A DNA stretch of 64,000 nt from contig NC_052154.1 in the NCBI RefSeq assembly GCF_902713615.1, positions 137,929,263 to 137,993,262 on the forward strand, in the 5' to 3' direction. Position numbers and translations under genes: made by a program. Below, piece by piece: positions 3,087 to 55,810 of this stretch; positions within the stretch are counted from its first letter, which is position 1; each line of letters starts with the position of its first letter. The DNA comes from Scyliorhinus canicula. Lineage: Eukaryota. Under the pieces are notes generated by a model. The model made no database searches. It worked only from the letters and a program-made list of their open reading frames with translations, and was not told the DNA's origin.

Positions 3087-3211
3087 CGACGGTCCAGATC
3101 CTGGCTCCTTGAGACCTTGGAAATATCCACTTTTCCCTCGGTAGGCAGTACCTCCTGTGAAGTTACACCAGTTTCCATCTCTATAGTTATTAGAAAATCC
3201 TCAGAAACAGA

Positions 3212-38130: not shown

Positions 38131-40107
38131 TACGGAGCATAATACAATGGTTCCAAATCTTTTCCCCACTGTGACCCTGTTTTAATGATTGAGAGCTGGG
38201 TGATGGGGGAGGCAGGGGTGGAGCAGGTGGAGAGCTGTTGATTGAGGTGGGGGGGAAGGCCATTGTTATGTAGAGAGGAGATTTTGAGCAGGGGTGCTAC
38301 TGAGTTGGGGAGAGTGGGGGCTATCGTTGAGCAGGGAGAGCAGAAATTGTTAATGGGATGGGGGGTTACCAATGGATTTGTCCACAATAGTTTTGAAGAC
38401 TTTTATGAGACCGCTGAGCAGAGAATCAATGCGAATATGGACTTGGCACTGATCCCATGCTTATCCCACCATTCACCACAATGCATATTCAAAGGACCTC
38501 CTCCATTGTAAGCACATCCAAGGAAGTCACCAATTAGCCTGTTGGGCTCTGAACTGAACAGCCAATCCGGTCATTGAAAGAATGACCAACCAGGGCAGCT
38601 AAAACAGTCCCATTGACAAACTGTTTGGAAAAAGAAAATTCATGTACTGGTCAGAATATTCGCTCAAAGGTCTTCATTGGTGCCTCAGTGCTGGAGTCAC
38701 AACCCACAGTTTAGGAACAAAGAGGATAAGGCCTTTTGCTGAGAGCCTTTCTCTCCCTCCATTGCTTTCCTCTGAGAGCAGCTTATTCAGCAGCTTATTT
38801 TCTCCTTTACTGCCTCTGCTGCATCTCCGTCTCATGCTACAACCCAAGATGGATGGTCTGGGAGCAAATGTTCTGACCAAACCATTGAAGTCGAAACCAA
38901 TGCCTACTCCATGTGTAGCAATCCTCCCAGTCAACATCACCAACTTTAAGCCATTCTGAAAGCACTCCTACACCTTAGGCAGAGCTAATAGAATTTAATC
39001 AGCCAGCTATTGCAGACTATACCAAGAATGGAAAAAGCAGCTCTCTTGACCCGTACTGACTAACACACTAATTAGTGCAGATAATTTAGTTACTGAGCCA
39101 AAGAGAAACAGTTCTTCTTGGAATTCTACATAAAGGGTGTGAATGAAAGTGGCCTTGACATCTGGAACTTATACAATGGGAGTAAGTAGCAATGGTTTTG
39201 GGCCCATTGAAATTCATATAATAGGAATGAATAAAAAGTGGTTTGGTCTATTGAAGCACTGTATGCTCCGAGGAAGTTAGAAAGGGTTTGTTTTAAAGTT
39301 TATACATTGATATGGGAACTACTTTTTTCACAAAATGACAAACCATTCGGTATTACATGGCACTAATCATGGGGCTGCAAGTGATGAAGCTGGGAGTAGA
39401 AGCAGCTGGGGAAGGGTGAAAGCAACTAATCACATTGAAACAGAATTAGTCGAGAGCAAAGACAGGCCAGTTGTCAGCTTAAGGAGCCATCATAATGTGT
39501 AAACAAATGTTCACGTTACTATGTGAATAGGGGATGGTTGCCATGAACTTTCACATCAATGCATAGTTACTGGCGTCAAATTTCACTTTCTGTCAAGCTT
39601 TTAAAAAATAATTATTTGTATGTCTGCATTTTTGTGTATAATTAATTGGATTTAGCAGTGTTTGATATTGTACATCCGAATAATAATCCCACATAAATCA
39701 TTTCAAGTTAATTAAAGGGAGACAGTCTCCATTATGTTCCCACAAAGGACTGACTGAGGAGCAGAAATGTAATAACATACTGGTTCAGTTGTCTCTGAAA
39801 CATTTCCATTTCTTTCTTGAAAAGCTGATACTAATTCACAATTACCACTCAGTTAACATATGTAAAAATACAATTGAAGAGAAAGGCTGACTTTAGTTTA
39901 TTTTGACACCAATAGAGCCCGAACCATGACATCCTTCTGCTTGTGATTCCAAGCATACCTTACAATGAGTGAACAAACCTTCTCGTTGCATAATTTCAGA
40001 CATCTCAACATGGAAAGGGGCTGTATGGTCCTGAACCTCCCTCGAATTTAGGACTCTGGTGGTAGAAATGCTGCCTGATCAGCACTGCCAGCCAATCAGA
40101 AGATGGC

Positions 40108-41760
40108 AAAGAACAAATAACAAAGAATAAAGAACATTACAGCCCTTCGGCCCACCAAGCCCGTGCCGAACCAGATTCTTTATTTAGACCGACTACTTAT
40201 TGCCCAAACAATCTGGATCCCTCCATGCCCCGCTCGTTCATGTGTCTATTAAGAGACATCTTAAATGTTGCAATCGTGTCTGCCTCCACCATCTCCACTG
40301 GTAACGCATTCCAGGCACCCACCACCCTCTGCGTGAAAAACATTCCCCACACATCTTCCCTAAACTTTCCCCCTCTCATCTTGAACCTGTATCCTCTTGT
40401 AATGGAGTCTTCCACCCTGGGAAACACGACTGACTATTCACACTGTCTATACCTCTCGTAATTTTGTACACCTCAATAAGGTCTCCACTCAGCACCCACC
40501 TTTCCAACAAAAACAATCTGAGTTTATTCAACCTCTCCCCATAGCTAACACCCTCCAGGCCAGGCAACATCCTGGTAAACCTTCTTTGCACTCTCTCCAA
40601 AGCACCCACGTCCTTCTGGTAGTGTGGCAACTAGAACTGCAAGCAATATTCCAAATGTGGCCGAATTAAAGTTTTAAACAACAGTACCATGACCTGCCAA
40701 CTCTTGTACTCAACGTCCCGGCCAATGAAGGCAAACATGCCTTATGCCTTTTTGACCAACTTATCCACCTTTGTTGCCACTTTCATGGAACTCTGAACCT
40801 GAGCACTCAGATCCCTCTGCAGTCAGTGTCCCTAAAGATTCTACCATTTACTGAATAATTCACACCTGAATTTGATCTTCCAAAATGCATCACCTCGCAT
40901 TTGCCCAGATTGAACTCCATTTGTCATTTCTCTGCCCAACTCTCCAATCTATCAATATTCTGCTATATTCTTTGACAGTTCCCTTCATGATCTGCAACTC
41001 CACCTTAGTGCCATCTGCAAACTTGCTAATCAGACCATCAACATTTTCCTCCAGGTCATTTATATATTTTACAAACAACAGTGGTCCCAGCATTGAACCC
41101 TGTGGAACACAACTAGTTACAGATCTCCATTCTGAAAAACACCCTTCTACTGTTACTCCCTGTCTCCTGCTGCCGAGCCAGTTCTTTATCCATCTAGCTA
41201 TCACACCCTGAATCCCATGTGACTTTACCTTTTATACCAGTCTGCCATGAAGGACCTTGCCAAATGCCTTACTAAAGTCCATGTAGATGATGTCACAGCC
41301 TGTCAAGGGGATTAATTTTGTCATCTCCTCAAAAAACTCTATCAAGTTTCCTCCCCTGCGCAAAACCATGTTGCCTATCACTAACAACTAACAAGTCCAT
41401 TCGCTTCCAAATGTCCAAATCCTGTCCCTCGGTGTCTTCTCTAACGCTTCCCTACCACGGAGGTCAGGCTCACTGGCCTATAATTACCTGGATTGTCCCT
41501 GGTTTTCTTTTTCAACAAAGGGACAACATTGGCTATTCTCCAGTCCTTTGGAACCTCAGCTGTGGTCAAAGATGATGCAAAGATATCTGTTAAGGGCCCC
41601 AGCTATTTCCTCTTTTTGTCTCTTGCATCCCACAATAACCTGGAATATATCCCATCTGGCCCAGGGGATTTGTTTACCTTAATGCATTTTAAGATATCCT
41701 TCATTATGCTGACATGTTCCAGAATATTCACACACCCATCCCGAACTTCAGAATCCATTG
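40108..41760 (-). mobile_element. CR1 LINE (5'-truncated, decayed ORF2 RT)
   Basis: KSPGPDGIY, VPQGSMLGPLLF, KFADGTK, LERVQRRFTRM, FFTQRVVGAWNALP; (TTCT)n-type tail. Confidence 0.9.
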
Positions 41761-41835
41761 TTGGCAGCACCACCAGGAATGGTGACTTCTGCTGGTAATG
41801 CTCTGAGGACTTCATCATGAATTGTCATTGGATCC

Positions 41836-42783
41836 TGTAGCCATGCTGGCCACGCAAAATGGACACTGAGCCAAACTAAAATGGAAGACTGCTGGGAAAC
41901 AGACAGTTTAGCCAGAACAGCAGTCTGCAAAGAGCAGTTTGCATTCTGCAGCAGCAGAAACCAGTTTGGGCTCAGGTGAAAAGACCTTAGCTAGGTGCAA
42001 ATGGCAAAACGCTTTGCATGCTAATGAGGCCATCAGACTTGAACACCCACACAATAGATACATTTGGTTCTGAATGGACACATTCTAATCAAGACCCAGA
42101 CATCGAGGCACCAGAAACCTCCAAACAAAAGGACATAAGAAACGCCCCCTCCATCACGGAGACCCCCTCGCATTGGGGAATTAATCCAGTATCGATAAGA
42201 AATTGATCCAATAGGTAGAGCCCGCCCGAGAAGAGGGAAGGACAATGGAACCCCTATAAAAGATAGGGACCTCGTGTTGTCCGGTCTGTTAAACCCGTGC
42301 TCCGGCTCCGACTGACATCGCGCATCCTGACTCCAGCCGTTGAGCACCAGCCGCCGAAACCGTAAGTTCAACGCTCGCTACGCGATCCAAGCCCACTAGA
42401 CTCCCAAGTACCGGAACGCTTGCTGAAGGCTGCAGACAAAACCAGGACGAAGGCCTCGTTCTCTGACCTTGCCTGTTCCTGTTAGATAAGTATTCTGCTT
42501 GCTTAAGTTTAGTTATAGCTTAGTCTCTTAGTGTGTGCATGAGTATTTATTATAACTGTATAATAAATATTGATCGTTTGAACTTTACTAATCGGTGTAT
42601 CGTCTTTATTACTTTGAACTTGACCTTGGAATACTTGTGACGTTGCCTATACGGCAACTGGCGACTCCAGAGCTAAATAATTACATAGAACAGAGCCTAG
42701 CAGTGTTAAGCACACGTCGAACTCGGAGGCGTGTTAATACACTCCAATAAACGCGTTTTACGCCCATAGTAAAACGTGCAACA
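41836..42783 (+). repeat. 5' LTR (948 bp)
   Basis: TGTAGCC...GTGCAACA; repeated 8866 bp downstream; ORF-track translations inside both LTRs are identical. Confidence 0.97.
42208..42261 (+). promoter_or_regulatory. LTR U3 core promoter
   Basis: CCAAT 42208-42212, GC box CCCGCCC 42221-42227, TATAAAA 42255-42261 in canonical order. Confidence 0.75.
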
Positions 42784-42788
42784 TTTAG

Positions 42789-42806
42789 TGGCGACTCTGG
42801 TGGGAC
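42789..42806 (+). promoter_or_regulatory. Primer-binding site, tRNA-Arg(UCU)
   Basis: TGGCGACTCTGGTGGGAC is the reverse complement of GTCCCACCAGAGTCGCCA, the 3' end of vertebrate tRNA-Arg-TCT as I recall it; starts 5 nt after the LTR. Confidence 0.85.
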
Positions 42807-43102
42807 CCTGTTGTAAGTGGAAACACCACAGTGTCCAGGACCCTGAAATTTGAATTGGAACTCCAAATTGCAGAGAAAGAAAGAGATCACAAGTATTCAA
42901 GGTGTTCAAAATAATAAGCGAAATTCGGAAGTGTGTTTTAGTGCATGCGTACTAACAGGGCTGTAAGGTAAAACTGAAAGCTTTTTGTTGCGACAAACTT
43001 TCGGTAGTTTTGTTAACGGAAAATAGCGTAAGCCGTACCCTTTTTTCGAAACACCACCCCAGCAACCCCCTGTTCCAAATTATAAAAAGAGAGTCAGAGG
43101 AA

Positions 43103-44851
43103 ATGGCCATGCAGGCAATGGAACGTCTGATGGATCCAGCAAAGTTTGTGGTCGCAGCGACCAGCAGCAGTAGCAGGGTAGGCCAGTGTCCCACGTGGGA
43201 GCTGGAACTCCGCAAATATCTGCAGGGAAAGGGATGGCCCCTTTGGAAAGAGTTTTGTGCAAATGAGGAGACAGGTCCCGGGAGTATAGGTCATACTTGG
43301 TGGGAGAACCTCTCTCAAATACACAAAAAGAGTTTAGGTAAAGCACGCAAGCCGATGGCGATTGTGTCCTGCTTGGCACAGTTGCGAGGCGCAGAGGAGG
43401 TCATCAGGACGCTCCGGACAGATTTAGAGGAAAGGAACCGAATGAGTAAGGTCGATGTCAGGGACATCGAGAAAGAAAACCTGGAATTAAAAGGGAAGTT
43501 GGCAGAGAAGGGTAGAGAGGTGGATGATGCCAAGAGGGCTCACCAGTCTTGTCTAGCTCATCTGAACAGTTCCCAGACCCAGTATGAGAAAGCCTATCAG
43601 GACGTGCAACGTGCCGTTCTGATAAGACAGGAATCGGAAAAGCAGGTGGAGGCATTGCAGAGGCAATGTTCCGATCTCAAAGCAGCTTTGAGAGCACTCC
43701 ATGCTGCAACAACCGAACAAAGACAAAGCACAGTTGACCACGCGAAATGCAGGAAACAGATTGCGGAACTGCAATCTCTGCTTTCGGTGCAGAATGGCTT
43801 CCAAAGCACCTTTGGAGCTCAGTTAGATGGGGAAAATGCCCCAGATTGGCAGGAATTAAGCGAGACAGCGCAGCGTTATGTTCAGGGAACATGTGCGCCA
43901 GCAGCTCAGCAGAAACGACAGGCACCCCAACCCCCCACAGCTCAGACCATAACCGCACCCATGAATCCCGTAACCACGCAGAGGAAAGCCGAATCAGAAG
44001 GCGCCCCAGACATAACTTACACCACCCCTTTAACAGTAACCCAGTTAAGGGACGCTTGTGAAAAGATCACTCCGTTCCTCCCCACCGCAGACCCCCACCA
44101 GTTTTTCGCTAAAGTAAAACAGCAGGCTACCATGTACGGCCTGGATGAGAGAGAGCAGGTTAAGCTCACCGTGCTGAGCTTAGACCAGAGCGTAGTAGCA
44201 GCCCTCCCCGACCCACAGAACGTGGCAGGAGGCAGCCTAGAGGAGATGCACACTGCCATTTTAGATGCCATCGGGTACAATAGAGGTGACCCCGTAGAAG
44301 GATTGAATAAGTGCAGGCAGAAGAGATCCGAACACCCCACAGCATTCGCAGGAAGGCTGTGGATTCATTTCAGCGCAGTTTTCGGACAGCTAGATAGAGC
44401 GCATTTAACCCGCGAAAACATGGTTAAGTGGACGCGCACAATTATCTCACACGCAACAGAAGCAGGACAGAGCGCTTGCAATAGCTACGACCCCTCAGAA
44501 GAGGCCCATAACGAAAAATGGGTCCTGAAAAGATTGTCCCGCGCTTGGGAGCAATCGCTTCAGGCAAAAGGAAAAGTTAGATCCCCAGAAGAGGCTCAGG
44601 CTGCTGCAGATATCCAAGCAGTCAGAGAGCACCAGAAGCCCGCATGGGTAAATGAAGGCAAGAGCAGCCCTCAACAGAAAGGACAGGAATGCTATAACTG
44701 TGGACAGTTAGGGCATTGGGCAAAAGAATGCCAAGCACCCCAGCGATCTCAGAGAGGCCAGCAGACAGGCACTCTGAACCGCAACAAAGCAAAACCCATC
44801 CACAATGTAGCAGTACAGTCAGGACCCACCAATGTGGACGAGACGAACTGA
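43103..44851 (+). CDS. gag: Gag polyprotein (582 aa from first ATG)
   Basis: Strong Kozak gaaATGg; long heptad coiled coil; MHR-like QKRSEHPTAFAGRLW; zinc knuckle CYNCGQLGHWAKEC. Confidence 0.92.
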   Translation: MAMQAMERLMDPAKFVVAATSSSSRVGQCPTWELELRKYLQGKGWPLWKEFCANEETGPGSIGHTWWENLSQIHKKSLGKARKPMAIVSCLAQLRGAEEVIRTLRTDLEERNRMSKVDVRDIEKENLELKGKLAEKGREVDDAKRAHQSCLAHLNSSQTQYEKAYQDVQRAVLIRQESEKQVEALQRQCSDLKAALRALHAATTEQRQSTVDHAKCRKQIAELQSLLSVQNGFQSTFGAQLDGENAPDWQELSETAQRYVQGTCAPAAQQKRQAPQPPTAQTITAPMNPVTTQRKAESEGAPDITYTTPLTVTQLRDACEKITPFLPTADPHQFFAKVKQQATMYGLDEREQVKLTVLSLDQSVVAALPDPQNVAGGSLEEMHTAILDAIGYNRGDPVEGLNKCRQKRSEHPTAFAGRLWIHFSAVFGQLDRAHLTRENMVKWTRTIISHATEAGQSACNSYDPSEEAHNEKWVLKRLSRAWEQSLQAKGKVRSPEEAQAAADIQAVREHQKPAWVNEGKSSPQQKGQECYNCGQLGHWAKECQAPQRSQRGQQTGTLNRNKAKPIHNVAVQSGPTNVDETN

Positions 44852-47800
44852 CGGTGTTCGGGCTCCCCCACTTGGGTCTGTGACACACTATGGGACTCAT
44901 CAGGGAGGCCCGTAGTCACGGCAAAAGTCAAAGGGAAGCCCATAGAGTTACTGTGGGACACAGGAGGATCCCGCACCACCATTAACTCCACAACCACGGC
45001 ACACGCAGACACGTGGCCGACCACCTCCACCATCACACTTAGCGGGTTCACCGGACACTCGCAGCAGGGATATATCACAGCACCCGTAGCGATCCAGCTA
45101 GGGAACATTAGCACAAGGCACCCCGTAGTTTTAGTAAATCTTCCCCGGACAGCAGAGCACATCCTGGGGATAGATTTTATGAACGCTCATAGCTTGTCAT
45201 TCGACCCAGTGAACCAGTGTGTCTGGCGAATGGCAAGATCAGACAGAGCCCCAGCCACCCTCACAGTAGGAGACTACGCTAATCGGATTAGCGCAGTGGG
45301 AGAGTACTCATTCGACCTGACTACACTCCACACCGACCGACAAATTAAGGCCCTAGTAAACAAACACAGGACAGCATTTGCAAGTCACCGTCATGACTGT
45401 GGTAGAATGACTGGACAAGTTCATGTTACCGGACAGGACCCCCGACCGCAAAAGCAGTATAGATTTCCCCTCGAGGCAGAGGTGGAAACAGAAAAGGTTA
45501 TAGGCAGCTTGTTGGACCAAGGTGTACTGAGAACGGTAGCCTCCACCAACAATGCCCCTATTTGGCCAGTGAGGAAGCCCGATGGATCATGGCGTCTGAC
45601 CATCGATTATCGGGAACTCAATAAAGTAACCCCCGCAGTAGCCCCAACGGTAGCTACTAGTCCCGAGACCATGCTCAAGCAGGGTCTCAACGCCAAGTAC
45701 TTCACGGTATTGGACATCAGTAATGGATTCTGGTCAATACCATTGGCAAAAGCGTGCCAATACAAATTCGCATTCACTTTTAAAACACAGCAGTACACGT
45801 GGACATGCCTCCCACAAGGATTCCACAATTCACCCTCCATTTTCCACCGACAGCTGGCAAGTGGATTAGAGAAATTTTCCCGACCCGAATGTCTGGTACA
45901 GTATGTAGACGACCTACTACTGCAGACAGACACAAAGGCAGAGCACATTTCGCTTCTGGCCGAACTCCTGGAACTCTTAACTGAAATTGGCTGTAAAGTT
46001 AACCCGAAAAAGGCCCAAATATTGGAAAGTAAAGTGATGTATTTGGGATCAGTCATCACGCACGGCAAACGCGAGATCGAATTCAAGAGAATTGATTCGA
46101 TTGTCAAATTGCCCCTTCCCCAGAATGTTTCAGCCCTCCGGTCGTTTTTAGGACTGGTTGGCTATTGTCGGAACCACATAGACGGATTCGCGACAAAAGC
46201 CGCCCCACTTTCAGACCTCCTTAAGAAAGGAGCCCCCTGGGAATGGCTTCCGCAGCATACAGGCGCTGTGGAAGAGTTGAAACGAGCCCTTAGTGCAGCA
46301 CCCGCGCTGCTAGTCCCCGACCAACTTTCACCGTACGCAATAGAGGTAGCGAGCACCGATCTGACCCTCTCGGCCGTGTTGCTTCAGGAACGGCACGAGC
46401 AGCTAAGACCAGTGGCTTATGCCTCCCGACTGTTAGACCCAGTAGAACAAGGATTTTCAGCCTGTGAGAGGCACCTCCTTGCTGTCTTCTGGGCAGTACA
46501 GTATTTCTCATACATCACCGGACTAAACCCCATCACCATTCTAACCGAACATACACCCACACAGCTACTACTAGACGGTCGACTGAAGGACGGTTCAGTT
46601 AGCCAGATTAGGGCAGCTAGGTGGACCCTACTTTTACAAGGACGGGACATTACAGTGAAACGGACACGCACCCACACATACTTAGCAGACAACCTCCAAT
46701 ACCCCGGACAGCCCCATGACTGTGAAATTGTAGCTCCCCTGCATAACACAGGACCCTTTTTAGCAAAAACACCCCCCAGGAAGATAGGGAACCCGAAACA
46801 AAGCCCCCAGCCCACAGACACGTGTGGACCCTTGAGGATTTATGTAGACGGTTCCTCCACAGTTTTAAATGGTGAGCGTATCACAGGATGCGGCATCTAC
46901 GTAGAGGACGCGCAGGGGCGCGCTCTCGAAGAGATAGCTCTTAAGTTACCAGGTCACTTAGGCGCGCAGGCAGCAGAGCTAGCAGCCATAGCGTACATAG
47001 TGGACCACCCCGATTCTTTCCCCAGCCCAGCAGACATATATTCAGACAGCTTATATGTCTGCAATAGCCTAACAGATTTTCTGCCCCTGTGGAGGACACG
47101 AGGTTTTGTCTCCGCAGACGGAAAACCCCTTCCATCAGCCCCTTTACTCCAGCATATCCTAGAGAAAGCGAAGGACAGGACCTTCGGCATCATAAAAGTT
47201 CGCAGCCACCATAGGTCATCACCCCCTGGGAATGTAAAAGCCGACGCATTGGCTAAGGCAGGTTCCAGGAGAGGACACTTATGGAACCCCCCAGCTAGCG
47301 CACCAGCTAGCGCCCCTGTGAGCGCAGTCCAAGTCTCACAGACTGATATTAAAGATCTCGTGGCAGCACAGAAACAGGACGGAGACCTCAGGGAGGTTTT
47401 CAAGGGAAATTTTGTGCCTGCGTACGAGCACTTTAAACACGCACTGACCACACATGAGGGTGTGATCATTAAAGACCAACTTTATGTGGTCCCACAGCAG
47501 GACAGGAATCAGATGATTGCCTTGTTCCATGACGGACACGGGCATCAGGGAATTGATGCAACAACGAGGCACCTCAGGCAACTCTGCTGGTGGCCTAATC
47601 TCAGGAATGATGTAACGCACTACATAGAGAATTGCCTGATTTGTGCTCAGAATAACCCGGAGAGGTATTCTAAGAAGGCACAACTTCGGCATACTCGCCC
47701 AGTTAACGGCCCTTGGACAAACCTCCAGATCGACTTTATAGGTCCATTGCCCCCTTGTCGGAATGGCTATAAATACGTTCTGGTGGTGATAGATACCTTT

Positions 47801-49078
47801 ACCAAATGGGTAGAGGCATTTCCCTCACGAACAAACACAGCTAAGACAGCTGCAAAGATCCTGACCCACCACATCTTCACGAGATGGGGTTTACCCCGAA
47901 GTATCGATTCGGACCAGGGATCTCACTTTACAGGACGGGTCATGAGGAACGTCCTGACAATATTCGGAATCAAACAGAACTTCCATATTGCGTATCATCC
48001 ACAGTCCAGCGGGATTGTGGAGCGCATGAATCGGACCCTAAAAACTACCCTTAGGAAAATGGTTCAAGAGAACAATTCCACATGGGATTCAGTGCTCCCC
48101 TTTGCACTTATGTTCATAAGGAACACTGTCTCCACATCGACAGGATACACACCACACACACTCATGACCGGACGCCCTATGAAAGGTACAGAATTCCTTT
48201 TAGGACTGGACATGACAAGCCCCGAAGTGACGGCCCTCACACATGAAAAGGCAGTTAAAGATCTAGTTGAGACTGTGAGGTCTGCACAGCTCGCAGCCGC
48301 AGTCCAGCTAGGGAAACGCCGACAGCAACGTACTGCCTGTTTCAATAAGACCGTACACACCACAGAATTCCAGGTTGGGCAACAGGTAATGTTATCTGTT
48401 TATAACCCCAGCAGTTTTTTGGCTCCAAAATATTCCGGTCCCTACTCAATTTCGGACAAAATTAGCCCCTCCGTTTACAGAATAAAGTATCCTAATGGGA
48501 AGACCGCGTGGTTCCATATAAACCAGTTAAAGGCATATGGAACACAGGCCAACCATGCTCACCATGTCCTGCTGGATGCAGCAGAACACTTCACCCCGCC
48601 CACCAGAAACACTTTTCCACCATCCCCCTCACAGACCAGTTCATCAACGGACTCGCCCACGACTCCGCCCACAGACCACTACAGACCACGCCCCGACACG
48701 CCCACAAGCTGCCACAGCAGAGACAGCAGGACTGACACTGACTCTGAAGACAGCGACAGCACACAGCCATACAGCCCACACTGCACCAACTACGACCCCG
48801 ACTCCAGTGACCCCATGGAAGTCACCTACCTCAAATATCCAGAACCACCACCCGACCCCGACTACCCCGACAACACACTCGACGCTACACAATGGCACAG
48901 GGACAATTCCTACAGACTTGTCCGCAATGATGAAAGTGACCCCCGGTCACACAACTCCAAAATAGCATGCCTGATCCACACAAGGGTGTGGGATCCGGGA
49001 GAGCAGGACGACACGGTGTCTGACTCCCGACACGGCAACCCCTTTGTGACCCTGTTCACAGAGGCAGAATCAAAGTGA
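44852..49078 (+). CDS. pol: Pro-Pol (protease, RT, tether RNase H, RNase H, integrase), in frame with gag via UGA readthrough
   Basis: Frame is open from the gag stop: LLWDTGGSRT and ILGIDF (protease); LPQGFHNSP and YVDD (RT); YVDGS/AELAA/YSDS/KAD (RNase H); HHCC and D,D35E, GPY (integrase). The ORF track starts it late, at 45179. Confidence 0.95.
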   Translation, partial: RCSGSPTWVCDTLWDSSGRPVVTAKVKGKPIELLWDTGGSRTTINSTTTAHADTWPTTSTITLSGFTGHSQQGYITAPVAIQLGNISTRHPVVLVNLPRTAEHILGIDFMNAHSLSFDPVNQCVWRMARSDRAPATLTVGDYANRISAVGEYSFDLTTLHTDRQIKALVNKHRTAFASHRHDCGRMTGQVHVTGQDPRPQKQYRFPLEAEVETEKVIGSLLDQGVLRTVASTNNAPIWPVRKPDGSWRLTIDYRELNKVTPAVAPTVATSPETMLKQGLNAKYFTVLDISNGFWSIPLAKACQYKFAFTFKTQQYTWTCLPQGFHNSPSIFHRQLASGLEKFSRPECLVQYVDDLLLQTDTKAEHISLLAELLELLTEIGCKVNPKKAQILESKVMYLGSVITHGKREIEFKRIDSIVKLPLPQNVSALRSFLGLVGYCRNHIDGFATKAAPLSDLLKKGAPWEWLPQHTGAVEELKRALSAAPALLVPDQLSPYAIEVASTDLTLSAVLLQERHEQLRPVAYASRLLDPVEQGFSACERHLLAVFWAVQYFSYITGLNPITILTEHTPTQLLLDGRLKDGSVSQIRAARWTLLLQGRDITVKRTRTHTYLADNLQYPGQPHDCEIVAPLHNTGPFLAKTPPRKIGNPKQSPQPTDTCGPLRIYVDGSSTVLNGERITGCGIYVEDAQGRALEEIALKLPGHLGAQAAELAAIAYIVDHPDSFPSPADIYSDSLYVCNSLTDFLPLWRTRGFVSADGKPLPSAPLLQHILEKAKDRTFGIIKVRSHHRSSPPGNVKADALAKAGSRRGHLWNPPASAPASAPVSAVQVSQTDIKDLVAAQKQDGDLREVFKGNFVPAYEHFKHALTTHEGVIIKDQLYVVPQQDRNQMIALFHDGHGHQGIDATTRHLRQLCWWPNLRNDVTHYIENCLICAQNNPERYSKKAQLRHTRPVNGPWTNLQIDFIGPLPPCRNGYKYVLVVIDTFTKWVEAFPSRTNTAKTAAKILTHHIFTRWGLPRSIDSDQGSHFTGRVMRNVLTIFGIKQNFHIAYHPQSSGIVERMNRTLKTTLRKMVQENNSTWDSVLPFALMFIRNTVSTSTGYTPHTLMTGRPMKGTEFLLGLDMTSPEVTALTHEKAVKDLVETVRSAQLAAAVQLGKRRQQRTACFNKTVHTTEFQVGQQVMLSVYNPSSFLAPKYSGPYSISDKISPSVYRIKYPNGKTAWFHINQLKAYGTQANHAHHVLLDAAEHFTPPTRNTFPPSPSQTSSSTDSPTTPPTDHYRPRPDTPTSCHSRDSRTDTDSEDSDSTQPYSPHCTNYDPDSSDPMEVTYLKYPEPPPDPDYPDNTLDATQWHRDNSYRLVRNDESDPRSHNSKIACLIHTRVWDPGEQDDTVSDSRHGNPFVTLFTEAESK

Positions 49079-50017
49079 GGTGTCCAGATGATGTAAGATA
49101 GGAATCGTTTGAGGGAAACGATGTCCTTTCTGATGGAACCTGCACGTATGTTTGTCTTCGTTTTATGTTTGTTTGTCTCAGGATTGTACATTGTTCAGCT
49201 GGAGGATGGACATCTTCTTTTCAGCTGAAAAGATTGTGACCACCTCACATACACGTTAGCTTGTCCGCAGATACTTTTGAGAACTTCGGTTTGATTGGAG
49301 ATCTTTTCCAAAGTTGTAAGGCCACACGCCAAATAGTTTATCTGCAGATATCTCTGAGAACTTCAGTGATGTCCTCAGTTGGAGCATCTTGGCTCCCTTG
49401 GTTTTTTAGGTGCCCCTCTATTCGGCGAAATAGAGGCTGCAAGTCATGGTCAACACATTCGTACCCGTTTCTTTCCAGGTTACTCAGGCAGTGGACAAAC
49501 GGCACTGAGGACCCGCCCTGTCTGAGAACCAACCCTTGGTCAGCCAAGCTCGGGTATGGCACAGCACGCCCTACCCGGGGATCCCATCCAACTCGTACCC
49601 GTAGCGGCCCATACGCAACTCATTCGGATGTTTATTTCCAAGTTTGTTTTCATTTTAGGTTAGGTAGCCCTTCGGCCACCATCCCACATGCTATTTACAT
49701 CCGGGAACATTCGGATGGTAAATCAGCAAAGCCTGCGAGACGGCTCGCAGAAGGAAGGATTGTTAGGTGTATGCTGGTCTTTAAATTCGCTTTTTGAAAA
49801 AAAAAAAAGAGGGGAGTCACAGGGTGTGACTTAGCCAGTCATTTTAAAGGGTCAATTGGGTTTTGAAAGACAGATGCACTAACAAGTAAAGGTCTTAAGC
49901 TGTGTATTGACAGATACTGTGCTTGATCCCAAAGGTTTCAAAGGACGAGACAGAGGTCGAAGCCAGGATTGTCAATACCGGAGGAAGAAGGAAGAGAAAG
50001 AAGAAGAACAACAAAAG

Positions 50018-50371
50018 ATGATGGAAGCCCACTTATTACTGTTTAATGTCATATGTATATGTGTGGAAACAAGACACGTTTCCCCCACAACCCCCACCGT
50101 AAATGTTAGTACAACAAACCCCCAGTGCTCAGCTCTGATCAGCGAGGTTCAGACCTGGTGTACTAAATTCATGACGTGGTACTCCATGTCCTACATAATC
50201 GAATCACTGTTGGTGATCGCGATCCTCATCATCCTAGTGCAGACCCTCAGGTTGAGGAAATGGAAGAGGAGAGCCTCTCGTTCCAGCACCTCACCCATCT
50301 ATAGAGTGCAATCCCCCATCTTCGGATTCCACCAAACCCCTCAACCCCTCACTGATTACAACACTCTGTAA
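50018..50371 (+). CDS. Small single-pass membrane protein (117 aa) in the env position
   Basis: ATGATGG good Kozak; hydrophobic N-terminus, S/T/P stalk with NVS sequon, Cys pair, TM YIIESLLVIAILIILVQTL, basic RLRKWKRR, C-terminal YNTL. Confidence 0.7.
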   Translation: MMEAHLLLFNVICICVETRHVSPTTPTVNVSTTNPQCSALISEVQTWCTKFMTWYSMSYIIESLLVIAILIILVQTLRLRKWKRRASRSSTSPIYRVQSPIFGFHQTPQPLTDYNTL

Positions 50372-50691
50372 ATAAAATTCAGCCATGTATTATATTGTTC
50401 CATACTCGACTGCCGAGTTGGGAAGTGTGATGTTGTGGTGTGAATGGTTAAGGTTTTAGAGTGATTAAATGTTTAAGTTAAGGTTAAGGTTAATAGTGAT
50501 AGGTAGAGGTTCCCAGTTGTAGTAATGCATGTCCCTTTGACATAGGGCCAAGTAGAAATGTTAGTTAAAATTTTTTTTCTCTTCTTCCCATAGTTTAGAA
50601 CAGAGTAGAACAGGAACTGGCAAGAGGTCAGAACACAAGGAAGGCAAAGTACATAGGTGATCCTTCACAATAGTATGATTGTGAGGATCAC

Positions 50692-50701
50692 AAGGAGGGA
50701 A
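50692..50701 (+). promoter_or_regulatory. 3' polypurine tract
   Basis: AAGGAGGGAA directly abutting the 3' LTR. Confidence 0.8.
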
Positions 50702-51649
50702 TGTAGCCATGCTGGCCACGCAAAATGGACACTGAGCCAAACTAAAATGGAAGACTGCTGGGAAACAGACAGTTTAGCCAGAACAGCAGTCTGCAAAGAG
50801 CAGTTTGCATTCTGCAGCAGCAGAAACCAGTTTGGGCTCAGGTGAAAAGACCTTAGCTAGGTGCAAATGGCAAAACGCTTTGCATGCTAATGAGGCCATC
50901 AGACTTGAACACCCACACAATAGATACATTTGGTTCTGAATGGACACATTCTAATCAAGACCCAGACATCGAGGCACCAGAAACCTCCAAACAAAAGGAC
51001 ATAAGAAACGCCCCCTCCATCACGGAGACCCCCTCGCATTGGGGAATTAATCCAGTATCGATAAGAAATTGATCCAATAGGTAGAGCCCGCCCGAGAAGA
51101 GGGAAGGACAATGGAACCCCTATAAAAGATAGGGACCTCGTGTTGTCCGGTCTGTTAAACCCGTGCTCCGGCTCCGACTGACATCGCGCATCCTGACTCC
51201 AGCCGTTGAGCACCAGCCGCCGAAACCGTAAGTTCAACGCTCGCTACGCGATCCAAGCCCACTAGACTCCCAAGTACCGGAACGCTTGCTGAAGGCTGCA
51301 GACAAAACCAGGACGAAGGCCTCGTTCTCTGACCTTGCCTGTTCCTGTTAGATAAGTATTCTGCTTGCTTAAGTTTAGTTATAGCTTAGTCTCTTAGTGT
51401 GTGCATGAGTATTTATTATAACTGTATAATAAATATTGATCGTTTGAACTTTACTAATCGGTGTATCGTCTTTATTACTTTGAACTTGACCTTGGAATAC
51501 TTGTGACGTTGCCTATACGGCAACTGGCGACTCCAGAGCTAAATAATTACATAGAACAGAGCCTAGCAGTGTTAAGCACACGTCGAACTCGGAGGCGTGT
51601 TAATACACTCCAATAAACGCGTTTTACGCCCATAGTAAAACGTGCAACA
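50702..51649 (+). repeat. 3' LTR (948 bp)
   Basis: Same sequence as the 5' LTR; followed by ATCC. Confidence 0.97.
51428..51433 (+). terminator. LTR polyadenylation signal
   Basis: AATAAA followed by T/GT-rich sequence; a second AATAAA lies near the LTR end. Confidence 0.65.
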
Positions 51650-52022
51650 ATCCCTGGACACAGGTCAGTGAAGGTGGAATGGGGGTCATGAGGACAGTGA
51701 TGCAGGGAGGAGCTAGGGGGTTGGCTGGTCGATGGCAAGGGAGTAATGTTCAGCCGTCTCCCACTTCATGGTGCCGGTTCCCTGAATTTGGCAGAGTGCC
51801 TGGTAACAAGGCATCCTACCCCATCCCCTTGTAGGCAGATGGGAAATCTGACAGGGTTTGATAGATTGCCTTTAGGGACCACAAAATTCTAGTGAGTTCA
51901 GAGATAATTAGTGCCAATTGGCTCATTAATGAGTCTTAATGGACATCCCACAGTGAATGGGCAAGTTCCTTGCCTTGACCCCTTCCCTCCTTCGACACAT
52001 TCAAGTGGAGTGGGGTATTACT

Positions 52023-52250: not shown

Positions 52251-54480
52251 TATCCGTCACAGAAAAGTGATGCACAGCCTCTCTCTCTTTCTCACTCTCT
52301 CTCCCCACCCACCCACCCCACCACCACCACCACCACCACCCCATCCCATCAACCACCCAATTTCATACCATCGGATGCTGGATGTTTCAGGTGGGCAGTG
52401 AGTGCATCCAGGAATTTTAACGAGAAGGGGATATCAAACTAACCCTTTCTTCACCAGCAGGCCACATAGTTGCATCAGACAACAATCGAGAGAGGAAACC
52501 CTGACTGATTTTTCCTTTCCAAGGGAATCCTGACACAAATTTCAAAGAATACTAAATTACCGCCCTGACTAAGATCAGCTAATGAAAGCTGTGTTCTTGC
52601 CACCCGAGTGGTGTGTGCGTTTATCTTTCCCTTGGAGTTAAATGGATTCGCAACAGGAGCTATATTTTCAGTGGCATTTTACGGATGACACGGTTTTGTC
52701 ACCTCAAATCTGTAATATTAGCAGGTCAATTAAACAGTGAATTACCTTTGTATATTCTAAAGTTCTATTTAAAAATTTCCTGCAATTCTATCTTAATGAG
52801 ATGTGGAGTGCGATAACTTACATACTCATTAACATAAGCATAAACTGTTGAATATCGTCATCGCGAATCATTTTATGAAATCTTTGCAATTATATAAGAA
52901 GCACTTGGAGCTTTCGTTTTATTTTGATATGCTGCTCACATCATTGTACAAGCTTTATATAGAGCAAACTTATTCCGCTTTAATTACACCGCCTCTCTAT
53001 CAGGTATTTCTTAACTGTCTCCTACAGACTGTTAGTCCCTGTGCTAATTTTGGCTCCATGCTTCATTACTTTTGCAGACCATATGCACATCGCAAAACCC
53101 GTGTGTACAATTTAATACATGCTCTGGATTAATACACAGGCTAGAGTTTGTTATTACAGGATAACTATGAGAAAAATGAAACATTCTTTTCCGACAAATT
53201 GCTCCTTGGCTTCTTTCTTGTTAATCATATTATGCACTGGTTAAAATTAAAACTAAGCACTATTAGCTGTTTAATGAGAATCGCACCCTGTGGTATTGAA
53301 AACTTTAGCTGACCACCAGCGGATAAAGGCAACAACTATTTATTTACAAGCAGAAAAACTATTTACATTCACCTATTTACAAGACACAGCAACAGCAAAC
53401 CACAACACCCTCAATCTCTTAATTCAGGCCTTGACTTCAGGTATTAAAGCTTGCACTCAGCTTTGATCCGCACGCACTCCCATTCCATTGGGTGGGGAGT
53501 CAGGTGGCCTCCAAGATTTGCCAAAACATCGGACGAGAAAGTCATGTGGTCTCTGAGGTCCGCCTCGGCATTCTTCCCCCTTCAGGTCCCCGGTACCTGA
53601 AAATGCCGATGTTAATACCCAGTCTATTGGGATCTACTTTTTATGTTGAAAGTGACCAAGTATCAGTATTGGAGTTTCTCCCCGGGAGTTGTCTCGCAAC
53701 GGCCAGCCTCTCCAATTGCTTCTCCTGGGACAAGTACCTCCTCGGCTAAGCCTCTCCAACCCCTGTGGCAAAAGACTCTGGGCGTGATCTTCCCAAAGGG
53801 GAACAAAGTCCCCAAGTGAGCCCGTTTAGCCGCCTGATTCCCAGCACTTGCAGTGCCTAGAAACACGTGGCTATTCAATGCGACTTGTTTTGAATAAAGG
53901 GCCTGAACAGGGAATGCATAGCCAAGGCCGCACATAGCCCCATTTTTTACAATGTGAGGTCCCACCGCTGGAATTCCCCGTTGTAGCAGAGATTGGGATG
54001 CTATTTTTAAATGGCATCACGATCTCCGAGGCCCCCAAATGAATTCCCGACCCCTCCCCAGCCTGAACGCAGTTTGGGAGGGTCCCCCCTCCGGTCCCTC
54101 CCCCCCCCCTCCCCCCCTCTGGGCCACCCCAACCCCACCACATCCACGCTGGGCAACCCTGACCTCATCACACACATGCATAAAATGCCAGCTTGGCACC
54201 TTGGCAGTGGCCCTGCCAGCTGGCACTATCACCTGTGCACCTTGACAGTGCCAGGATGTCACCTGGGTGGCACTGCCAGGGTGCCAGACTGGTACAGCTA
54301 AGGTGCCAGGCTGGCACCATGCCCAAAGAGCATGGAGCTAGGAGCCTCCGATCCCCTTGGAGACCCCCGTTTGAGGGGACCAGTACCAAACAGCACTCTT
54401 CCGCGGCAAAGGGATTGATTCCCCAAGCCTCAGGTACCTTGCGAATCTGACACATGTGGCACCCCACTAGTTACATCTTG

Positions 54481-55810
54481 TCATCCAGAAAAAGACCCAT
54501 TTATCCCGACTCTCAGTCTTCTATCCATCATCCAGTCTTCTATCCAAGCTAATAAATTGCCCCTAACTCCAGGCGATCTAGCCTTGTGTATTAACCTTCT
54601 GTGTGGCACTTTATCAAACACCTTCTGGAAGTCCAGATATACCACTTCTGCAGAATGACTATTATCCGCTTGGCCTGTTGCATTTTCGAAGAACTCTAGA
54701 AAATTGAATCCTCTCATGGAGTGAACTGATTTCTACGCATCTTCTCTACTGTTGTGGCACAATACTCTGTATGCTTCAGCCAATGTCTATGTCCATGTAT
54801 TTACAATGTGTATTTATTGTATGTCCGATTTTTCTCATGTATGGAACGATTACACATCTTCTCTATTGTTGCAGTACTATACTCTGCATGCTTCACCCGA
54901 TGTCTATGTCCATGTATTTACATGTATTTACATTGTGTATTTATTGTATGTCCTATGTTTCTTATGTATGGAATGATCTGCCTGGACTGAACGTAGAACA
55001 ATACTTTTAACTATACCTACACATGACAATTAATCTAAGTCTAATCTAAACATGATTTACCCTTCACAAAACCATACAGACTCTGATGGATTGTGTTTTG
55101 ACTTTCCAATTGTCCTGATATTACTTCCTTGATAATGGATTCTAACAATTTCTCAACAACGTATGTTAAACTAACTGGTCTGTAATTTCCTACATACTGC
55201 ATCCCTCCCTTTTTGAATACGGGTGTTACATTAGCATTTTTCCAATCCACTGGAACCTTTCCCGTGTCCAGGGAATGTTGGAATATTATAATCAATGGAT
55301 CTGCTATCTCCACTGCCACTTCCTTTAACACTCTAGGATATAGACCATCAGGTTCTGGGAACTTGTCTGCCTTCAATATGAACAGATTGTTGAGTATGTT
55401 TCCCTATTGATATTGATCGTTCCACCCTTTCTATTACCTCTGAATTATCCGTTCCTATCGGAATGGTACACATGTCCTCCATTGTGATAACTGGGGCAAA
55501 ATATTGATTTAGCATCTCTGTCATTTCTGGAATCCCCACTGTTAACTCTCCTGTTTCTTCTTCCAAAGGACCAGCATCCACTTTAGCGACCCACTTTCCT
55601 TTTATGTGCTTATATAAGCTTTTGCTATCCTTATGGATATTTTGCACTAGCTTTCTTTTGTAATTTATCTTAGCTCTTCTTATTACTTTTTTCATAACCC
55701 TTTGTTTATGTTTGAAATGTTTCCCAATCTTCTCGCCTGCCACTGGTCTTTGCAACATAGTATACCTTGGTTTTTGTCTTTATATTGTCCTTAACCTCCT
55801 TGCTCAGCCA
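54481..55810 (-). mobile_element. CR1 LINE ORF2 remnant, interrupted at about 54720-55045
   Basis: KFPEPDGLYPRVLKE, WKNANVTPVFKKG, NYRPVSLT, YLDFQKVFDKVPH. Confidence 0.88.

What the first reader, a model, noticed from the sequence alone, without database searches (positions are those of the whole stretch)
41836..51649. Apparently intact, very recent provirus of a divergent env-less retrovirus lineage
Seen: 948-bp LTRs with no difference found by eye, a perfect 4-bp TSD, all catalytic motifs present and about 6 kb of gag-pol with no disabling lesion, in a window where every other element is decayed. The RT (WPVRKPDGSWRLTIDYRELN, LDISNGFW, LPQGFHNSP, YVDD) resembles spuma-like/basal retroviral RTs more than the neighbouring Gypsy RTs. 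Inference: a recently or currently active element near the retrotransposon-retrovirus boundary (lokiretrovirus-, Odin- or snakehead-retrovirus-like), probably insertionally polymorphic.
Basis: partly seen in the sequence, partly recalled or inferred. Interest (0 to 1): 0.85.

Follow-up and report, generated by a model that had tools for sequence, protein, structure and literature searches.

The report
Young intact env-less endogenous retrovirus
This is a real, very recently inserted and fully open-reading endogenous retrovirus without an envelope gene.

Summary
Bases 41836-51649 are a 9,814-bp provirus with two 948-bp LTRs that are 100% identical, TG..CA ends and a perfect 4-bp duplication (ATCC). 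It has a PBS-like site, a polypurine tract, an open gag (582 codons) and an open pro-pol (1,408 codons). One in-frame TGA separates gag from pro-pol. Relatives share this layout, so it is a read-through design and not a lesion. All PR, RT, RNase H and IN catalytic residues are present. The 1.6 kb between pol and the 3' LTR holds no env.

Pol has the retroviral double RNase H, so it is not Ty3/Gypsy (100% bootstrap). I anchored lokiretroviruses by their F-like env, and the element falls outside them (88-96%). It sits in a clade of "NYNRIN-like" Pol genes from frogs and coelacanth, at 42-48% identity. In one of two analyses that clade is sister to a bird/turtle group (80%). RT is equally distant from gamma- and foamy-virus RT. 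RNase H and IN look foamy/loki-like. The 4-bp duplication, one CCHC box, GPY motif and read-through look class-I-like.

Side lead: the retroelement half of mammalian NYNRIN matches this clade best.

SnRV, ERV-L, Odin and foamy reference sequences could not be placed in the trees.

The parts
41832..41835 (+). Left copy of the 4-bp target-site duplication (ATCC)
   Evidence: Identical tetranucleotide directly outside both LTRs
41836..42783 (+). 5' LTR, 948 bp, TG...CA ends. TATA-like box at 42255. AATAAA at 42562 and 42746, so the R/U5 boundary is not resolved
   Evidence: 100% identical to the 3' LTR over 948 bp. Motif positions. CpG o/e 0.81
42789..42806 (+). Primer-binding-site-like sequence starting TGG, 5 nt after the LTR. 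The primer tRNA was not identified
   Evidence: Read directly. No tRNA gene in the window to compare with
43103..44851 (+). gag, 582 codons plus TGA, no break. N-terminal long helix / coiled coil, all-helical central part, one CCHC zinc knuckle near the C-terminus
   Evidence: ORF. zf-CCHC E=6e-8 and only weak coiled-coil families. One C-X2-C-X4-H-X4-C box. Low-confidence single-sequence model with a helix at residues 119-207. Homologous to gag of L005 (E=3e-50) and L002 (E=3e-13)
44849..44945 (+). Putative read-through signal: in-frame TGA followed by C, an 8-nt spacer, then a G+C-rich stem structure
   Evidence: gag and pol share a frame with this single stop between them. Fold is -38.7 kcal/mol, z = -2.5, 2 of 200 shuffles as good. 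The stop context is nearly the same in relative L005, with one compensatory pair. Six related loci show the same one-stop, same-frame layout
44852..49078 (+). pro-pol, 1,408 codons plus stop, no break. Domains: PR 44903-45187, RT 45569-46051, tether (degenerate RNase H) 46244-46639, added RNase H 46835-47266, IN zinc domain 47489-47659, IN core 47723-48001, IN SH3/GPY 48404-48538, P/D/S/T-rich tail 48569-49075
   Evidence: Pfam hits: RVP 1.7e-6, RVT_1 9e-34, RT_RNaseH_2 7e-21, RNase_H 7e-16, Integrase_H2C2 1e-18, rve 2e-16, SH3_Tf2-1 1e-6, and no dUTPase. Catalytic residues. AlphaFold model mean pLDDT 83.5. Structural matches to foamy PR-RT and MLV RT, TM 0.86-0.88 on the RT part
49079..50691 (+). 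3' internal region without an env gene; 19, 39 and 21 stops in the three frames
   Evidence: Longest ATG ORFs are 142 and 117 codons. No Pfam hit. No similarity to the env-like ORFs of relatives L001/L004 or to the other downstream ORFs
50018..50371 (+). Orphan 117-codon ORF with a signal-peptide-like start, one transmembrane-like segment and a basic tail. Status unknown, possibly chance
   Evidence: Hydropathy. No Pfam family. No homologue in the 5.8-billion-protein search
50692..50701 (+). Polypurine tract (AAGGAGGGAA) abutting the 3' LTR
   Evidence: Read directly
50702..51649 (+). 3' LTR, 948 bp
   Evidence: 100% identical to the 5' LTR
51650..51653 (+). Right copy of the target-site duplication (ATCC)

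Best explanation
This is a single, very young germ-line provirus of a retrovirus-type LTR element with a double RNase H. It has no envelope gene, and its gag and pro-pol are fully open.

Shown:
- Structure is LTR-PBS-gag-TGA-pro-pol-1.6 kb non-coding-PPT-LTR, with a 4-bp target duplication.
- LTR divergence is zero.
- All enzyme active sites are present.
- It sits in a clade ('clade A') with Pol genes from frogs (Rhinophrynus, Pyxicephalus, Aquarana, Xenopus), coelacanth and a few unnamed contigs.
- That clade is outside Ty3/Gypsy and outside lokiretroviruses. In one of two analyses it is sister to a bird/turtle group.

Inferred mechanism:
- Transcription starts in U3 of the 5' LTR.
- Gag is made by normal termination.
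- Occasional read-through of the UGA, helped by the downstream structure, gives a Gag-Pro-Pol fusion, as in gamma- and epsilonretroviruses.
- A tRNA primes reverse transcription at the TGG... site, and the polypurine tract primes the plus strand.
- An integrase with an N-terminal extension like that of foamy/gamma integrases inserts the DNA with a 4-bp stagger.
- Without env, new copies would arise inside germ-line cells (retrotransposon-like) or with help from another virus.

From zero differences in 948 bp, the insertion is at most about 0.8-3.2 million years old (95% bound), assuming 2e-9 to 5e-10 substitutions per site per year. It could be far younger and polymorphic.
For: - Anatomy and identity of LTRs and TSD.
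- Open frames and domains.
- Active sites on invariant alignment columns.
- Read-through layout shared by L001, L004, L002, L003, L006 and L089, with the same TGA-C context in the closest relative L005. Downstream fold z = -2.5.
- Purifying selection between this element and L005 in RT (pN 0.135, pS 0.85 and saturated, 80% aa identity).
- Phylogeny, RT plus tether, 303 taxa: all double-RNase-H sequences 100%, loki 100% and basal, the rest 96%; WIN+P0079 100%, +P0004 96%, clade A 49%.
- Second alignment and distance method, 200 bootstraps: double-RNase-H 100, loki 100, non-loki 88, clade A 51, clade A plus bird/turtle 80, clade A plus loki 0.
- Group-profile scores for the element (RT-tether / RH / IN): clade A 620/151/451, bird/turtle 467/79/363, loki 354/41/315, gamma-like 334/59/254, Gypsy 335/-/376.
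- No env.
- Undepleted CpG.
Against: - Clade A itself has only 49-51% bootstrap. Its position relative to class I and other retroviral groups is unresolved (23-26%).
- Trees are neighbour-joining only. They hold no named foamy, SnRV, ERV-L/ERV3, class II or Odin sequences, because none came back from the searches and fetching them by accession was barred.
- The CA fold of Gag is not shown (single-sequence model, pLDDT 47).
- The read-through structure rests on two sequences.
- The primer tRNA is unknown.
- Identical LTRs could also come from assembly polishing or gene conversion.
- Only one copy is visible, so activity of the family is inferred and not shown.
- The host species is unknown.
Confidence: 0.78

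Rival explanations
1. It is a lokiretrovirus or an Odin-like element, at the retrotransposon-retrovirus boundary.
For: - Double RNase H without env, as in Odin (PMC9040795).
- The RNase H groups with loki and bird/turtle RNase H rather than with class I (82%).
- Gag has an N-terminal coiled coil, as in the loki-related BHIKHARI Gag (bioRxiv 10.1101/2024.03.25.586437) and in loki locus L089.
- Relatives are named NYNRIN-like, and loki IN was reported as sister to CGIN1 (PMC7947760).
Against: - Loki anchored by F-like env (PF00523, E=2e-5 and 1e-4) forms a separate 100% clade.
- The element is on the other side of a 96% / 88% split.
- Clade A plus loki: 0 of 200 bootstraps.
- Profile score against loki is 354/41/315 versus 620/151/451 for its own clade.
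- The loki representative P0082 is much closer to Ty3 than the element is: whole-protein score against the Ty3 Gag-Pol chain 304 vs 237 bits, and against the Ty3 RT/RNase H chain 168 vs 134 bits.
- No Odin sequence was available, so Odin is excluded only indirectly, through its reported sister relation to loki.
Confidence: 0.04
2. It is a divergent class I (epsilon/gamma-related, ERV1) endogenous retrovirus that has lost env.
For: - 4-bp TSD, one zinc knuckle, GPY motif after IN and no dUTPase are the ERV1 traits in Table 1 of PMC4299795.
- gag-stop-pro-pol in one frame, with an 8-nt spacer before a stem, is the gamma/epsilon design.
- RT is 32-34% identical to MLV/XMRV RT with TM 0.86-0.88.
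- In the first tree the element falls with class I and others, although support is only 23%.
Against: - It lacks the MLVIN_C domain that marks the class I hits.
- Its RNase H is not of the class I type.
- Profile scores against two class-I-marked groups are the lowest of all retroviral groups.
- A class I fish ERV scores 427 bits against MLV RT where the element scores 232.
- The second tree puts clade A with the bird/turtle group at 80%.
Confidence: 0.1
3. It is a foamy-like (spuma-related) endogenous retrovirus.
For: - Best solved-structure matches are foamy for RNase H (2lsn, 7ksf, 7o24) and for IN (PFV IN 149 bits, E=2e-42, aligned from PFV residue 11-12 so including the N-terminal extension).
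- Among full-length viral Pol models with a name, the best is equine foamy virus (E=6e-74, 26% id); an unnamed entry ranks first.
- Gag has a coiled-coil N-terminus.
- PFV also makes 4-bp duplications (my own knowledge, not tested here).
Against: - Foamy viruses and foamy-like fish ERVs lack Cys-His boxes in Gag, and their RT motif is YXDD(I/V) (PMC5210030). Foamy viruses also make Pol separately from Gag (my own knowledge).
- Here Gag has a CCHC box, pro-pol is fused to gag by read-through, and the RT motif is YVDDL.
- No Spuma protease family hit.
- Identity to foamy Pol (26%) is no higher than to WDSV or a gammaretrovirus (28%).
- RT-tether bits: foamy 207 vs gamma 212.
- No full-length gamma IN is in the PDB, so 'foamy is best for IN' is partly by default.
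Confidence: 0.06
4. The apparent youth is an artefact. The two LTRs were made identical by assembly collapse, polishing or gene conversion, and the element is older than it looks.
For: Nothing in the sequence points to this. It simply cannot be excluded without reads.
Against: - Perfect TSD and clean LTR boundaries.
- No break in 5,976 bp of coding sequence, while every other element in the window is decayed.
- CpG is not depleted in the whole 9.8 kb, not only in the LTRs.
Confidence: 0.05

Closest known systems
'NYNRIN-like' / 'Gypsy retrotransposon integrase-like' Pol genes of frogs and coelacanth (clade A: P0001 Rhinophrynus dorsalis, P0002 Pyxicephalus adspersus, P0003 Aquarana catesbeiana, P0073 Xenopus tropicalis, P0005 Latimeria chalumnae; unnamed contigs P0004, P0006, P0079)
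   Same: Same Pol architecture: RT, tether, added RNase H, H2C2, rve, no MLVIN_C. Where gag is seen it has a CCHC box (L002, L005, L090). gag-stop-pol share one frame (L002, L003). RT is 57-60% identical and whole Pol 42-48%. The P0079 fragment is 80% identical in RT.
   Different: No member is close at the DNA level; the best is 68% over 1.9 kb. Whether the others carry env is unknown, because contigs end too early or DNA was not retrievable. The clade has only 49-51% bootstrap. I found no paper that names it.
Bird/turtle group (P0007-P0022, P0025, P0120, P0260, P0318; loci L001, L004). It may correspond to Ovex1/SpeV or ERV4 of the literature, which was not tested
   Same: Sister to clade A at 80% in one analysis. 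Second-best profile for RT-tether and RNase H. Same RNase H type. Same gag-stop-pro-pol frame design.
   Different: It carries a third ORF of 835-839 aa with no Pfam family, which the element lacks. Its gag has no zinc knuckle hit. Identity is 35-38%. ERV4 as defined in PMC4299795 has 5-bp TSD, no zinc finger and no GPY/F, all unlike this element.
Lokiretroviruses (PMC7947760), anchored here by L088/P0275 and L089/P0261
   Same: Double RNase H of the same type, coiled-coil Gag, and gag-stop-pol in one frame.
   Different: Separate 100% clade on the far side of an 88-96% split. They have an F-like env (PF00523) and are closer to Ty3.
Gamma- and epsilonretroviruses / ERV1
   Same: 4-bp TSD, CCHC, GPY, no dUTPase, stop-codon read-through with an 8-nt spacer, and RT 32-34% identical to MLV RT (PMC4299795).
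   Different: No MLVIN_C, a different RNase H type, the lowest profile scores among retroviral groups, and no env.
Foamy viruses
   Same: Best solved-structure matches for RNase H and IN, including the N-terminal extension. RT is as close to foamy as to gamma.
   Different: CCHC in Gag, Gag-Pro-Pol fusion by read-through, YVDDL motif, no env or accessory genes (PMC5210030).
Odin retrotransposons of sea anemones (PMC9040795)
   Same: Double RNase H and no env.
   Different: Odin is reported as sister to loki and lives in cnidarians. The element is separated from loki with support and its relatives are vertebrate. No Odin sequence could be compared directly.
NYNRIN (CGIN1), a domesticated therian gene
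   Same: Its tether, RNase H and IN part matches clade A best.
   Different: It is a host gene fused to KH/NYN domains, with no RT, gag or LTRs. It is only 28-30% identical to this element.

Membership tests
Retrovirus-type LTR element (Ortervirales with double RNase H) | Paired LTRs with TG..CA, target-site duplication, PBS next to the 5' LTR, polypurine tract next to the 3' LTR | tested here: met
   The primer tRNA was not identified.
Retrovirus-type LTR element (Ortervirales with double RNase H) | Pol order PR-RT-tether-added RNase H-IN with intact active sites | tested here: met
   Pfam hits. Residues on invariant columns. Model pLDDT 83.5. 100% bootstrap with all other double-RNase-H sequences.
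Retrovirus-type LTR element (Ortervirales with double RNase H) | Gag with capsid fold and nucleocapsid | tested here: inconclusive
   One CCHC box is present. The capsid fold is not shown: the single-sequence model has pLDDT 47 and is all-helical.
Retrovirus-type LTR element (Ortervirales with double RNase H) | env gene | tested here: not met
   No ORF over 142 ATG-codons, no family hit and no similarity to relatives' env-like ORFs in 49079-50701.
Lokiretroviruses | RT falls inside the loki clade | tested here: not met
   The loki clade, anchored, is separate. Support for the split is 96% and 88%. Clade A plus loki: 0 of 200 bootstraps.
Lokiretroviruses | Env related to paramyxovirus-type fusion glycoprotein (PF00523) | tested here: not met
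   No env at all in the element. PF00523 is found only in L088 and L089.
Lokiretroviruses | Double RNase H, with RNase H of the loki/foamy type | tested here: met
   (82% cluster with loki and bird/turtle RNase H).
Odin retrotransposons | RT sister to loki; cnidarian host; double RNase H without env | not testable with these tools
   No Odin sequence was returned by any search. Structure alone (double RNase H, no env) matches. Separation from loki argues against membership indirectly.
Ty3/Gypsy (Metaviridae) | Single RNase H directly after RT; RT inside Gypsy diversity | tested here: not met
   The added RNase_H domain (PF00075) is present. The element is outside 149 Gypsy-type sequences at 100% bootstrap. 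RT-tether scores 131 bits against Ty3 versus 207-212 against foamy/gamma.
ERV1 / class I (gamma, epsilon) | 4-bp TSD, 1-2 zinc fingers, GPY/F after IN, no dUTPase (PMC4299795 Table 1) | tested here: met
ERV1 / class I (gamma, epsilon) | Pol groups with class I; MLV-type IN C-terminal domain; class I RNase H | tested here: not met
   No PF18697. RNase H clusters elsewhere. Lowest profile scores. The RT position relative to class I is unresolved and separate.
Spumaretrovirinae / foamy-like ERVs | Gag without Cys-His box; Pol not fused to Gag; RT motif YXDD(I/V) | tested here: not met
   CCHC is present, gag and pro-pol share a frame with one stop, and the motif is YVDDL. The Cys-His and RT-motif criteria are from PMC5210030; separate Pol expression is my own knowledge.
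Spumaretrovirinae / foamy-like ERVs | Pol inside the foamy clade | not testable with these tools
   No foamy sequence could be placed in the trees. By similarity only: 26% identity to equine foamy Pol, equal to WDSV/gamma at 28%.
ERV4 (PMC4299795) | 5-bp TSD, no zinc finger, no GPY/F | tested here: not met
   4-bp TSD, one CCHC box, GPY present.
SnRV-related retroviruses (clade Huo of PMC6001957) | RT groups with snakehead retrovirus and class III ERVs | not testable with these tools
   No named SnRV or ERV-L sequence came back. Two unnamed BFVD entries (Q2VF30_2; Q88285_1 with 47% identity over 251 columns) could not be identified.

The most novel reading that the evidence does not exclude
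Clade A, perhaps together with the bird/turtle group, may be a deep retroviral lineage of its own. On this reading it lies between lokiretroviruses and the recognised genera, and combines class-I-like gag/read-through/integration traits with a loki/foamy-type RNase H and a Gypsy-like IN C-terminus. It would be the source lineage of the retroelement half of the therian gene NYNRIN, and this window would hold a still coding-competent, env-less member of it.
Probability: 0.2. Interest if true: 0.65.

Novelty: new member of a known kind. Interest (0 to 1): 0.42.

Why it matters
Young, fully open proviruses are the best material for describing how a retroviral lineage is built, and this lineage has no described exogenous or well-annotated member. 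The element shows a complete gene plan for it: coiled-coil Gag with one zinc knuckle, UGA read-through, double RNase H, an integrase with an N-terminal extension and a GPY tail, and no env. That helps sort the many 'NYNRIN-like' gene models in frog, coelacanth, bird and turtle annotations into what they are, namely ERV pol genes. If the side lead holds, it also gives a concrete living relative for the retroviral donor of NYNRIN, which the literature calls Ty3/Gypsy-derived or loki-like. As a single locus it is otherwise an ordinary kind of thing. Intact ERVs with identical LTRs are common in lower vertebrates, and secondary env loss is common among ERVs generally.

Tried and rejected
- Exact look-up of the element's Pol in public assemblies: not on record, so no host and no copy count.
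- DNA around the frog and coelacanth relatives: file too large or not on record.
- Closest full-length relative P0004/L090: the contig ends about 1 kb after the called pol gene. The ORF after pol is the continuation of the IN C-terminal domain (pol interrupted once there), so it gives no information on env.
- Metagenome scan with a clade A profile: only 27-43% relatives, nothing close.
- Single-sequence Gag model: too poor for a fold search.
- Sequence search of the L001 env-like ORF against solved structures: nothing.
- Rfam, tRNA and tandem-repeat scans of the window: empty.
- The 117-codon ORF: no homologue.
- Hope of named SnRV or foamy Pol among protein hits: none.
- UniProt ids of two unnamed BFVD hits: not found in the paper library.
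- Considered and rejected: Ty3/Gypsy; lokiretrovirus; ERV4; foamy-like, by gag and expression design.
- The consensus lines printed by the alignment tool were not used.

Full report
**Observation**

The region 41836-51649 is a complete LTR element. The two LTRs (41836-42783 and 50702-51649) are 948 bp each and match at every base. The match ends exactly at both outer edges. The ends are TG...CA, and the tetranucleotide ATCC flanks both sides. The window holds no second copy or solo LTR.

Five bases after the 5' LTR there is a TGG-initiated PBS-like site. A 10-nt polypurine tract abuts the 3' LTR. The LTR carries a TATA-like box and two AATAAA signals, so U3/R/U5 cannot be fixed from sequence alone.

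**Genes**

- gag runs from the ATG at 43103 to a TGA at 44849-44851 (582 codons).
- The next codon continues in the same frame for 1,408 codons to 49078. An open frame of that length has a chance probability of about 4e-30.
- Pfam finds one CCHC knuckle in Gag. In pro-pol it finds a retropepsin, RVT_1, the degenerate RNase H ('tether'), a second RNase_H, the integrase zinc and core domains and an SH3/GPY C-terminal domain. There is no dUTPase.
- The catalytic residues are all present and sit on invariant columns of three alignments. They are DTG; motif-A D and YVDD; D-E-D-D; HHCC and D,D-35-E.
- An AlphaFold model of RT-to-IN built on 47 relatives has mean pLDDT 83.5. It superposes on foamy PR-RT and MLV RT with TM 0.86-0.88 over the RT part.
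- Neither gene has a break.

**The stop between gag and pol is a design feature**

In six related loci from four groups the gag stop is the only in-frame stop before pol. These loci are clade A (L002, L003), bird/turtle (L001, L004), a class-I-like element (L006) and loki (L089). The closest relative, L005, has the same TGA-C context.

After the stop come 8 nt and then a G+C-rich stem. The 100-nt fold is -38.7 kcal/mol, z = -2.5. With only two sequences the covariation evidence is thin, at one compensatory pair. By analogy with gamma- and epsilonretroviruses (established knowledge), I infer Gag-Pro-Pol synthesis by UGA read-through.

**No env**

The 1.6 kb between pol and the 3' LTR has 19, 39 and 21 stops in its three frames. 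Its longest ATG ORFs are 142 and 117 codons. It has no family hit and no similarity to the third ORFs of relatives. The 117-codon ORF looks like a small type-I membrane protein, but it has no homologue among 5.8 billion proteins. I treat it as unsupported.

**Age**

- Zero differences in 948 bp give a 95% upper bound of roughly 0.8-3.2 Myr for assumed rates of 2e-9 to 5e-10 per site per year (the rates are my assumption).
- CpG observed/expected is 0.65 in the element and 0.81 in the LTR, against 0.37-0.39 in the flanks.
- Outside the element no ORF exceeds 221 codons, and the other RT/IN matches are short fragments.
- Against the closest relative (L005; 68% nt, 80% aa in RT), synonymous sites are saturated (pS 0.85) while pN is 0.135. 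The family has therefore evolved under strong purifying selection.

**Relatives**

The best full-length matches are only 42-48% identical. They are gene models named 'NYNRIN-like' or 'Gypsy retrotransposon integrase-like' in frogs and the coelacanth, plus unnamed contigs. A bird/turtle group follows at 35-38%, then class-I-marked ERVs at 31-35%, then Gypsy. One 336-aa fragment (P0079) is 80% identical.

**Anchoring lokiretroviruses**

Two loci of a fish group (L088/P0275 and L089/P0261) carry a third ORF that hits PF00523 Fusion_gly, with E = 2e-5 and 1e-4. This is the reported hallmark of loki (PMC7947760). That group is therefore loki.

**Trees**

First analysis: RT plus tether, 303 taxa, 399 columns, NJ, 100 bootstraps.
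- All double-RNase-H sequences: 100%.
- Loki: 100% and basal.
- Everything else, including the element: 96%.
- Bird/turtle group: 99%.
- The element with P0079: 100%; with P0004 added: 96%.
- 'Clade A' (16 taxa): 49%.

Second analysis: L-INS-i alignment, Scoredist distances, 200 bootstraps.

| Grouping | Bootstrap (%) |
|---|---|
| Non-loki double-RNase-H | 88 |
| Clade A | 51 |
| Clade A + bird/turtle | 80 |
| Clade A + loki | 0 |

Profile scores agree, shown as RT-tether / RNase H / IN bits:

| Group profile | Score |
|---|---|
| Clade A | 620 / 151 / 451 |
| Bird/turtle | 467 / 79 / 363 |
| Loki | 354 / 41 / 315 |
| Gamma-like | 334 / 59 / 254 |
| Gypsy | 335 / - / 376 |

The RNase H clusters with loki and bird/turtle RNase H rather than with class I (82%). 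The IN tree is weak.

**Named comparators by similarity**

- RT-tether: foamy 207 bits, MLV-type 212, Ty3 131, HIV about 57.
- RNase H: best match is foamy.
- IN: best match is PFV IN at 149 bits, aligned from its N-terminal extension onward. No full-length gamma IN is in the PDB, so this ranking is partly by default.
- Predicted viral structures: the best named Pol models are equine foamy (26%), WDSV (28%) and a bat gammaretrovirus (28%). Two unnamed entries could not be identified.

**Literature criteria**

By the class table of PMC4299795, the 4-bp TSD, one zinc finger, GPY and absence of dUTPase are ERV1-like and unlike ERV3/ERV4. Two criteria from PMC5210030 argue against a foamy-like element: no Cys-His box and YXDD(I/V). 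So does separate expression of foamy Pol (my own knowledge). The five-clade scheme of PMC6001957 leaves SnRV-related 'Huo' as a possible home, which I could not test.

**Conclusion**

The element is a young, coding-intact, env-less endogenous retrovirus of a poorly described retroviral lineage. It is not Gypsy and not loki. Its traits are a mosaic of class-I-like and loki/foamy-like features.

Its 'basal/spuma-like RT' remark is fair. Its loki/Odin suggestion is not supported.

**Side lead**

The retroelement half of NYNRIN (P0052, P0058) scores best against clade A in all three segments:

| Segment | Clade A | Bird/turtle | Loki | Gypsy |
|---|---|---|---|---|
| Tether | 101-107 | 93-99 | 87-92 | 92-93 |
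| RNase H | 70-76 | 34-36 | 12-13 | not tested |
| IN | 241-243 | 185-186 | 134-135 | 156-167 |

Its best pairwise matches are bullfrog, Rhinophrynus and coelacanth members at 412-441 bits. The other groups reach 264 (bird/turtle), 251 (loki) and 206 (Gypsy). The literature calls the donor Ty3/Gypsy (PMC9447858) or nearest to loki IN (PMC7947760).

**Limits**

- Trees are NJ only.
- No named foamy, SnRV, ERV-L, class II or Odin sequences are in the trees.
- The host is unknown.
- Only one copy is visible.
- There are no reads to check the assembly.
- The relatives L005 and L090 are damaged copies. In L005, pro-pol has at least one premature stop and one frameshift. In L090, pol is interrupted once.

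One search printed the coordinate of one such stop in L005. It is not repeated here.

Noticed in passing
Proteins P0052, P0058 (NYNRIN) against clade A; corresponds to window 46244-48538: The retroelement-derived half of the mammalian gene NYNRIN (tether, RNase H, integrase) is most similar to the clade that holds this element. It is less similar to lokiretroviruses or Gypsy. It includes a match to the added, retrovirus-type RNase H.
   Followed up: partly
L005:1-261 and window 40882-41138: L005 is a JGI metagenome record and carries the closest relative of the element. It also shares a 260-bp repeat (70% identity) with window sequence that lies outside the provirus. The contig therefore probably comes from the same or a related host genome.
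   Followed up: no
window 50018-50371 (+): A 117-codon ORF with a signal-peptide-like start, one transmembrane-like segment and a basic tail lies between pol and the 3' LTR. It has no family and no homologue anywhere.
   Followed up: yes
window 48569-49075 (+): Pol ends in a 169-residue tail rich in P, D, S and T after the GPY domain. It has no family hit, and its presence in relatives was not examined.
   Followed up: no
window 2921-3103 (+), 4491-4763 (-), 33751-35103 (-): Short, weak (30-39% identity) matches to Gypsy-type Pol proteins.
   Followed up: no
window 40001-42000 and 54001-56000: Marked excess of C over G on the + strand (GC skew -0.28 and -0.25) in the host sequence on both sides of the insertion. 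No tandem repeat was reported there.
   Followed up: no
L001:4486-12532 and L004:1463-9506: Two contigs of the bird/turtle group carry open gag (565 aa), pol (1,194-1,214 aa) and a third ORF of 835-839 aa with no known family. They may correspond to Ovex1- or ERV4-type elements of the literature.
   Followed up: no
L088:224-9608 and L089:7649-17117: Two apparently open lokiretrovirus loci whose third ORF hits the paramyxovirus-type fusion glycoprotein family below Pfam's cut-off (E 2e-5 and 1e-4). In L088, gag and pol are called as one 2,510-aa product.
   Followed up: partly
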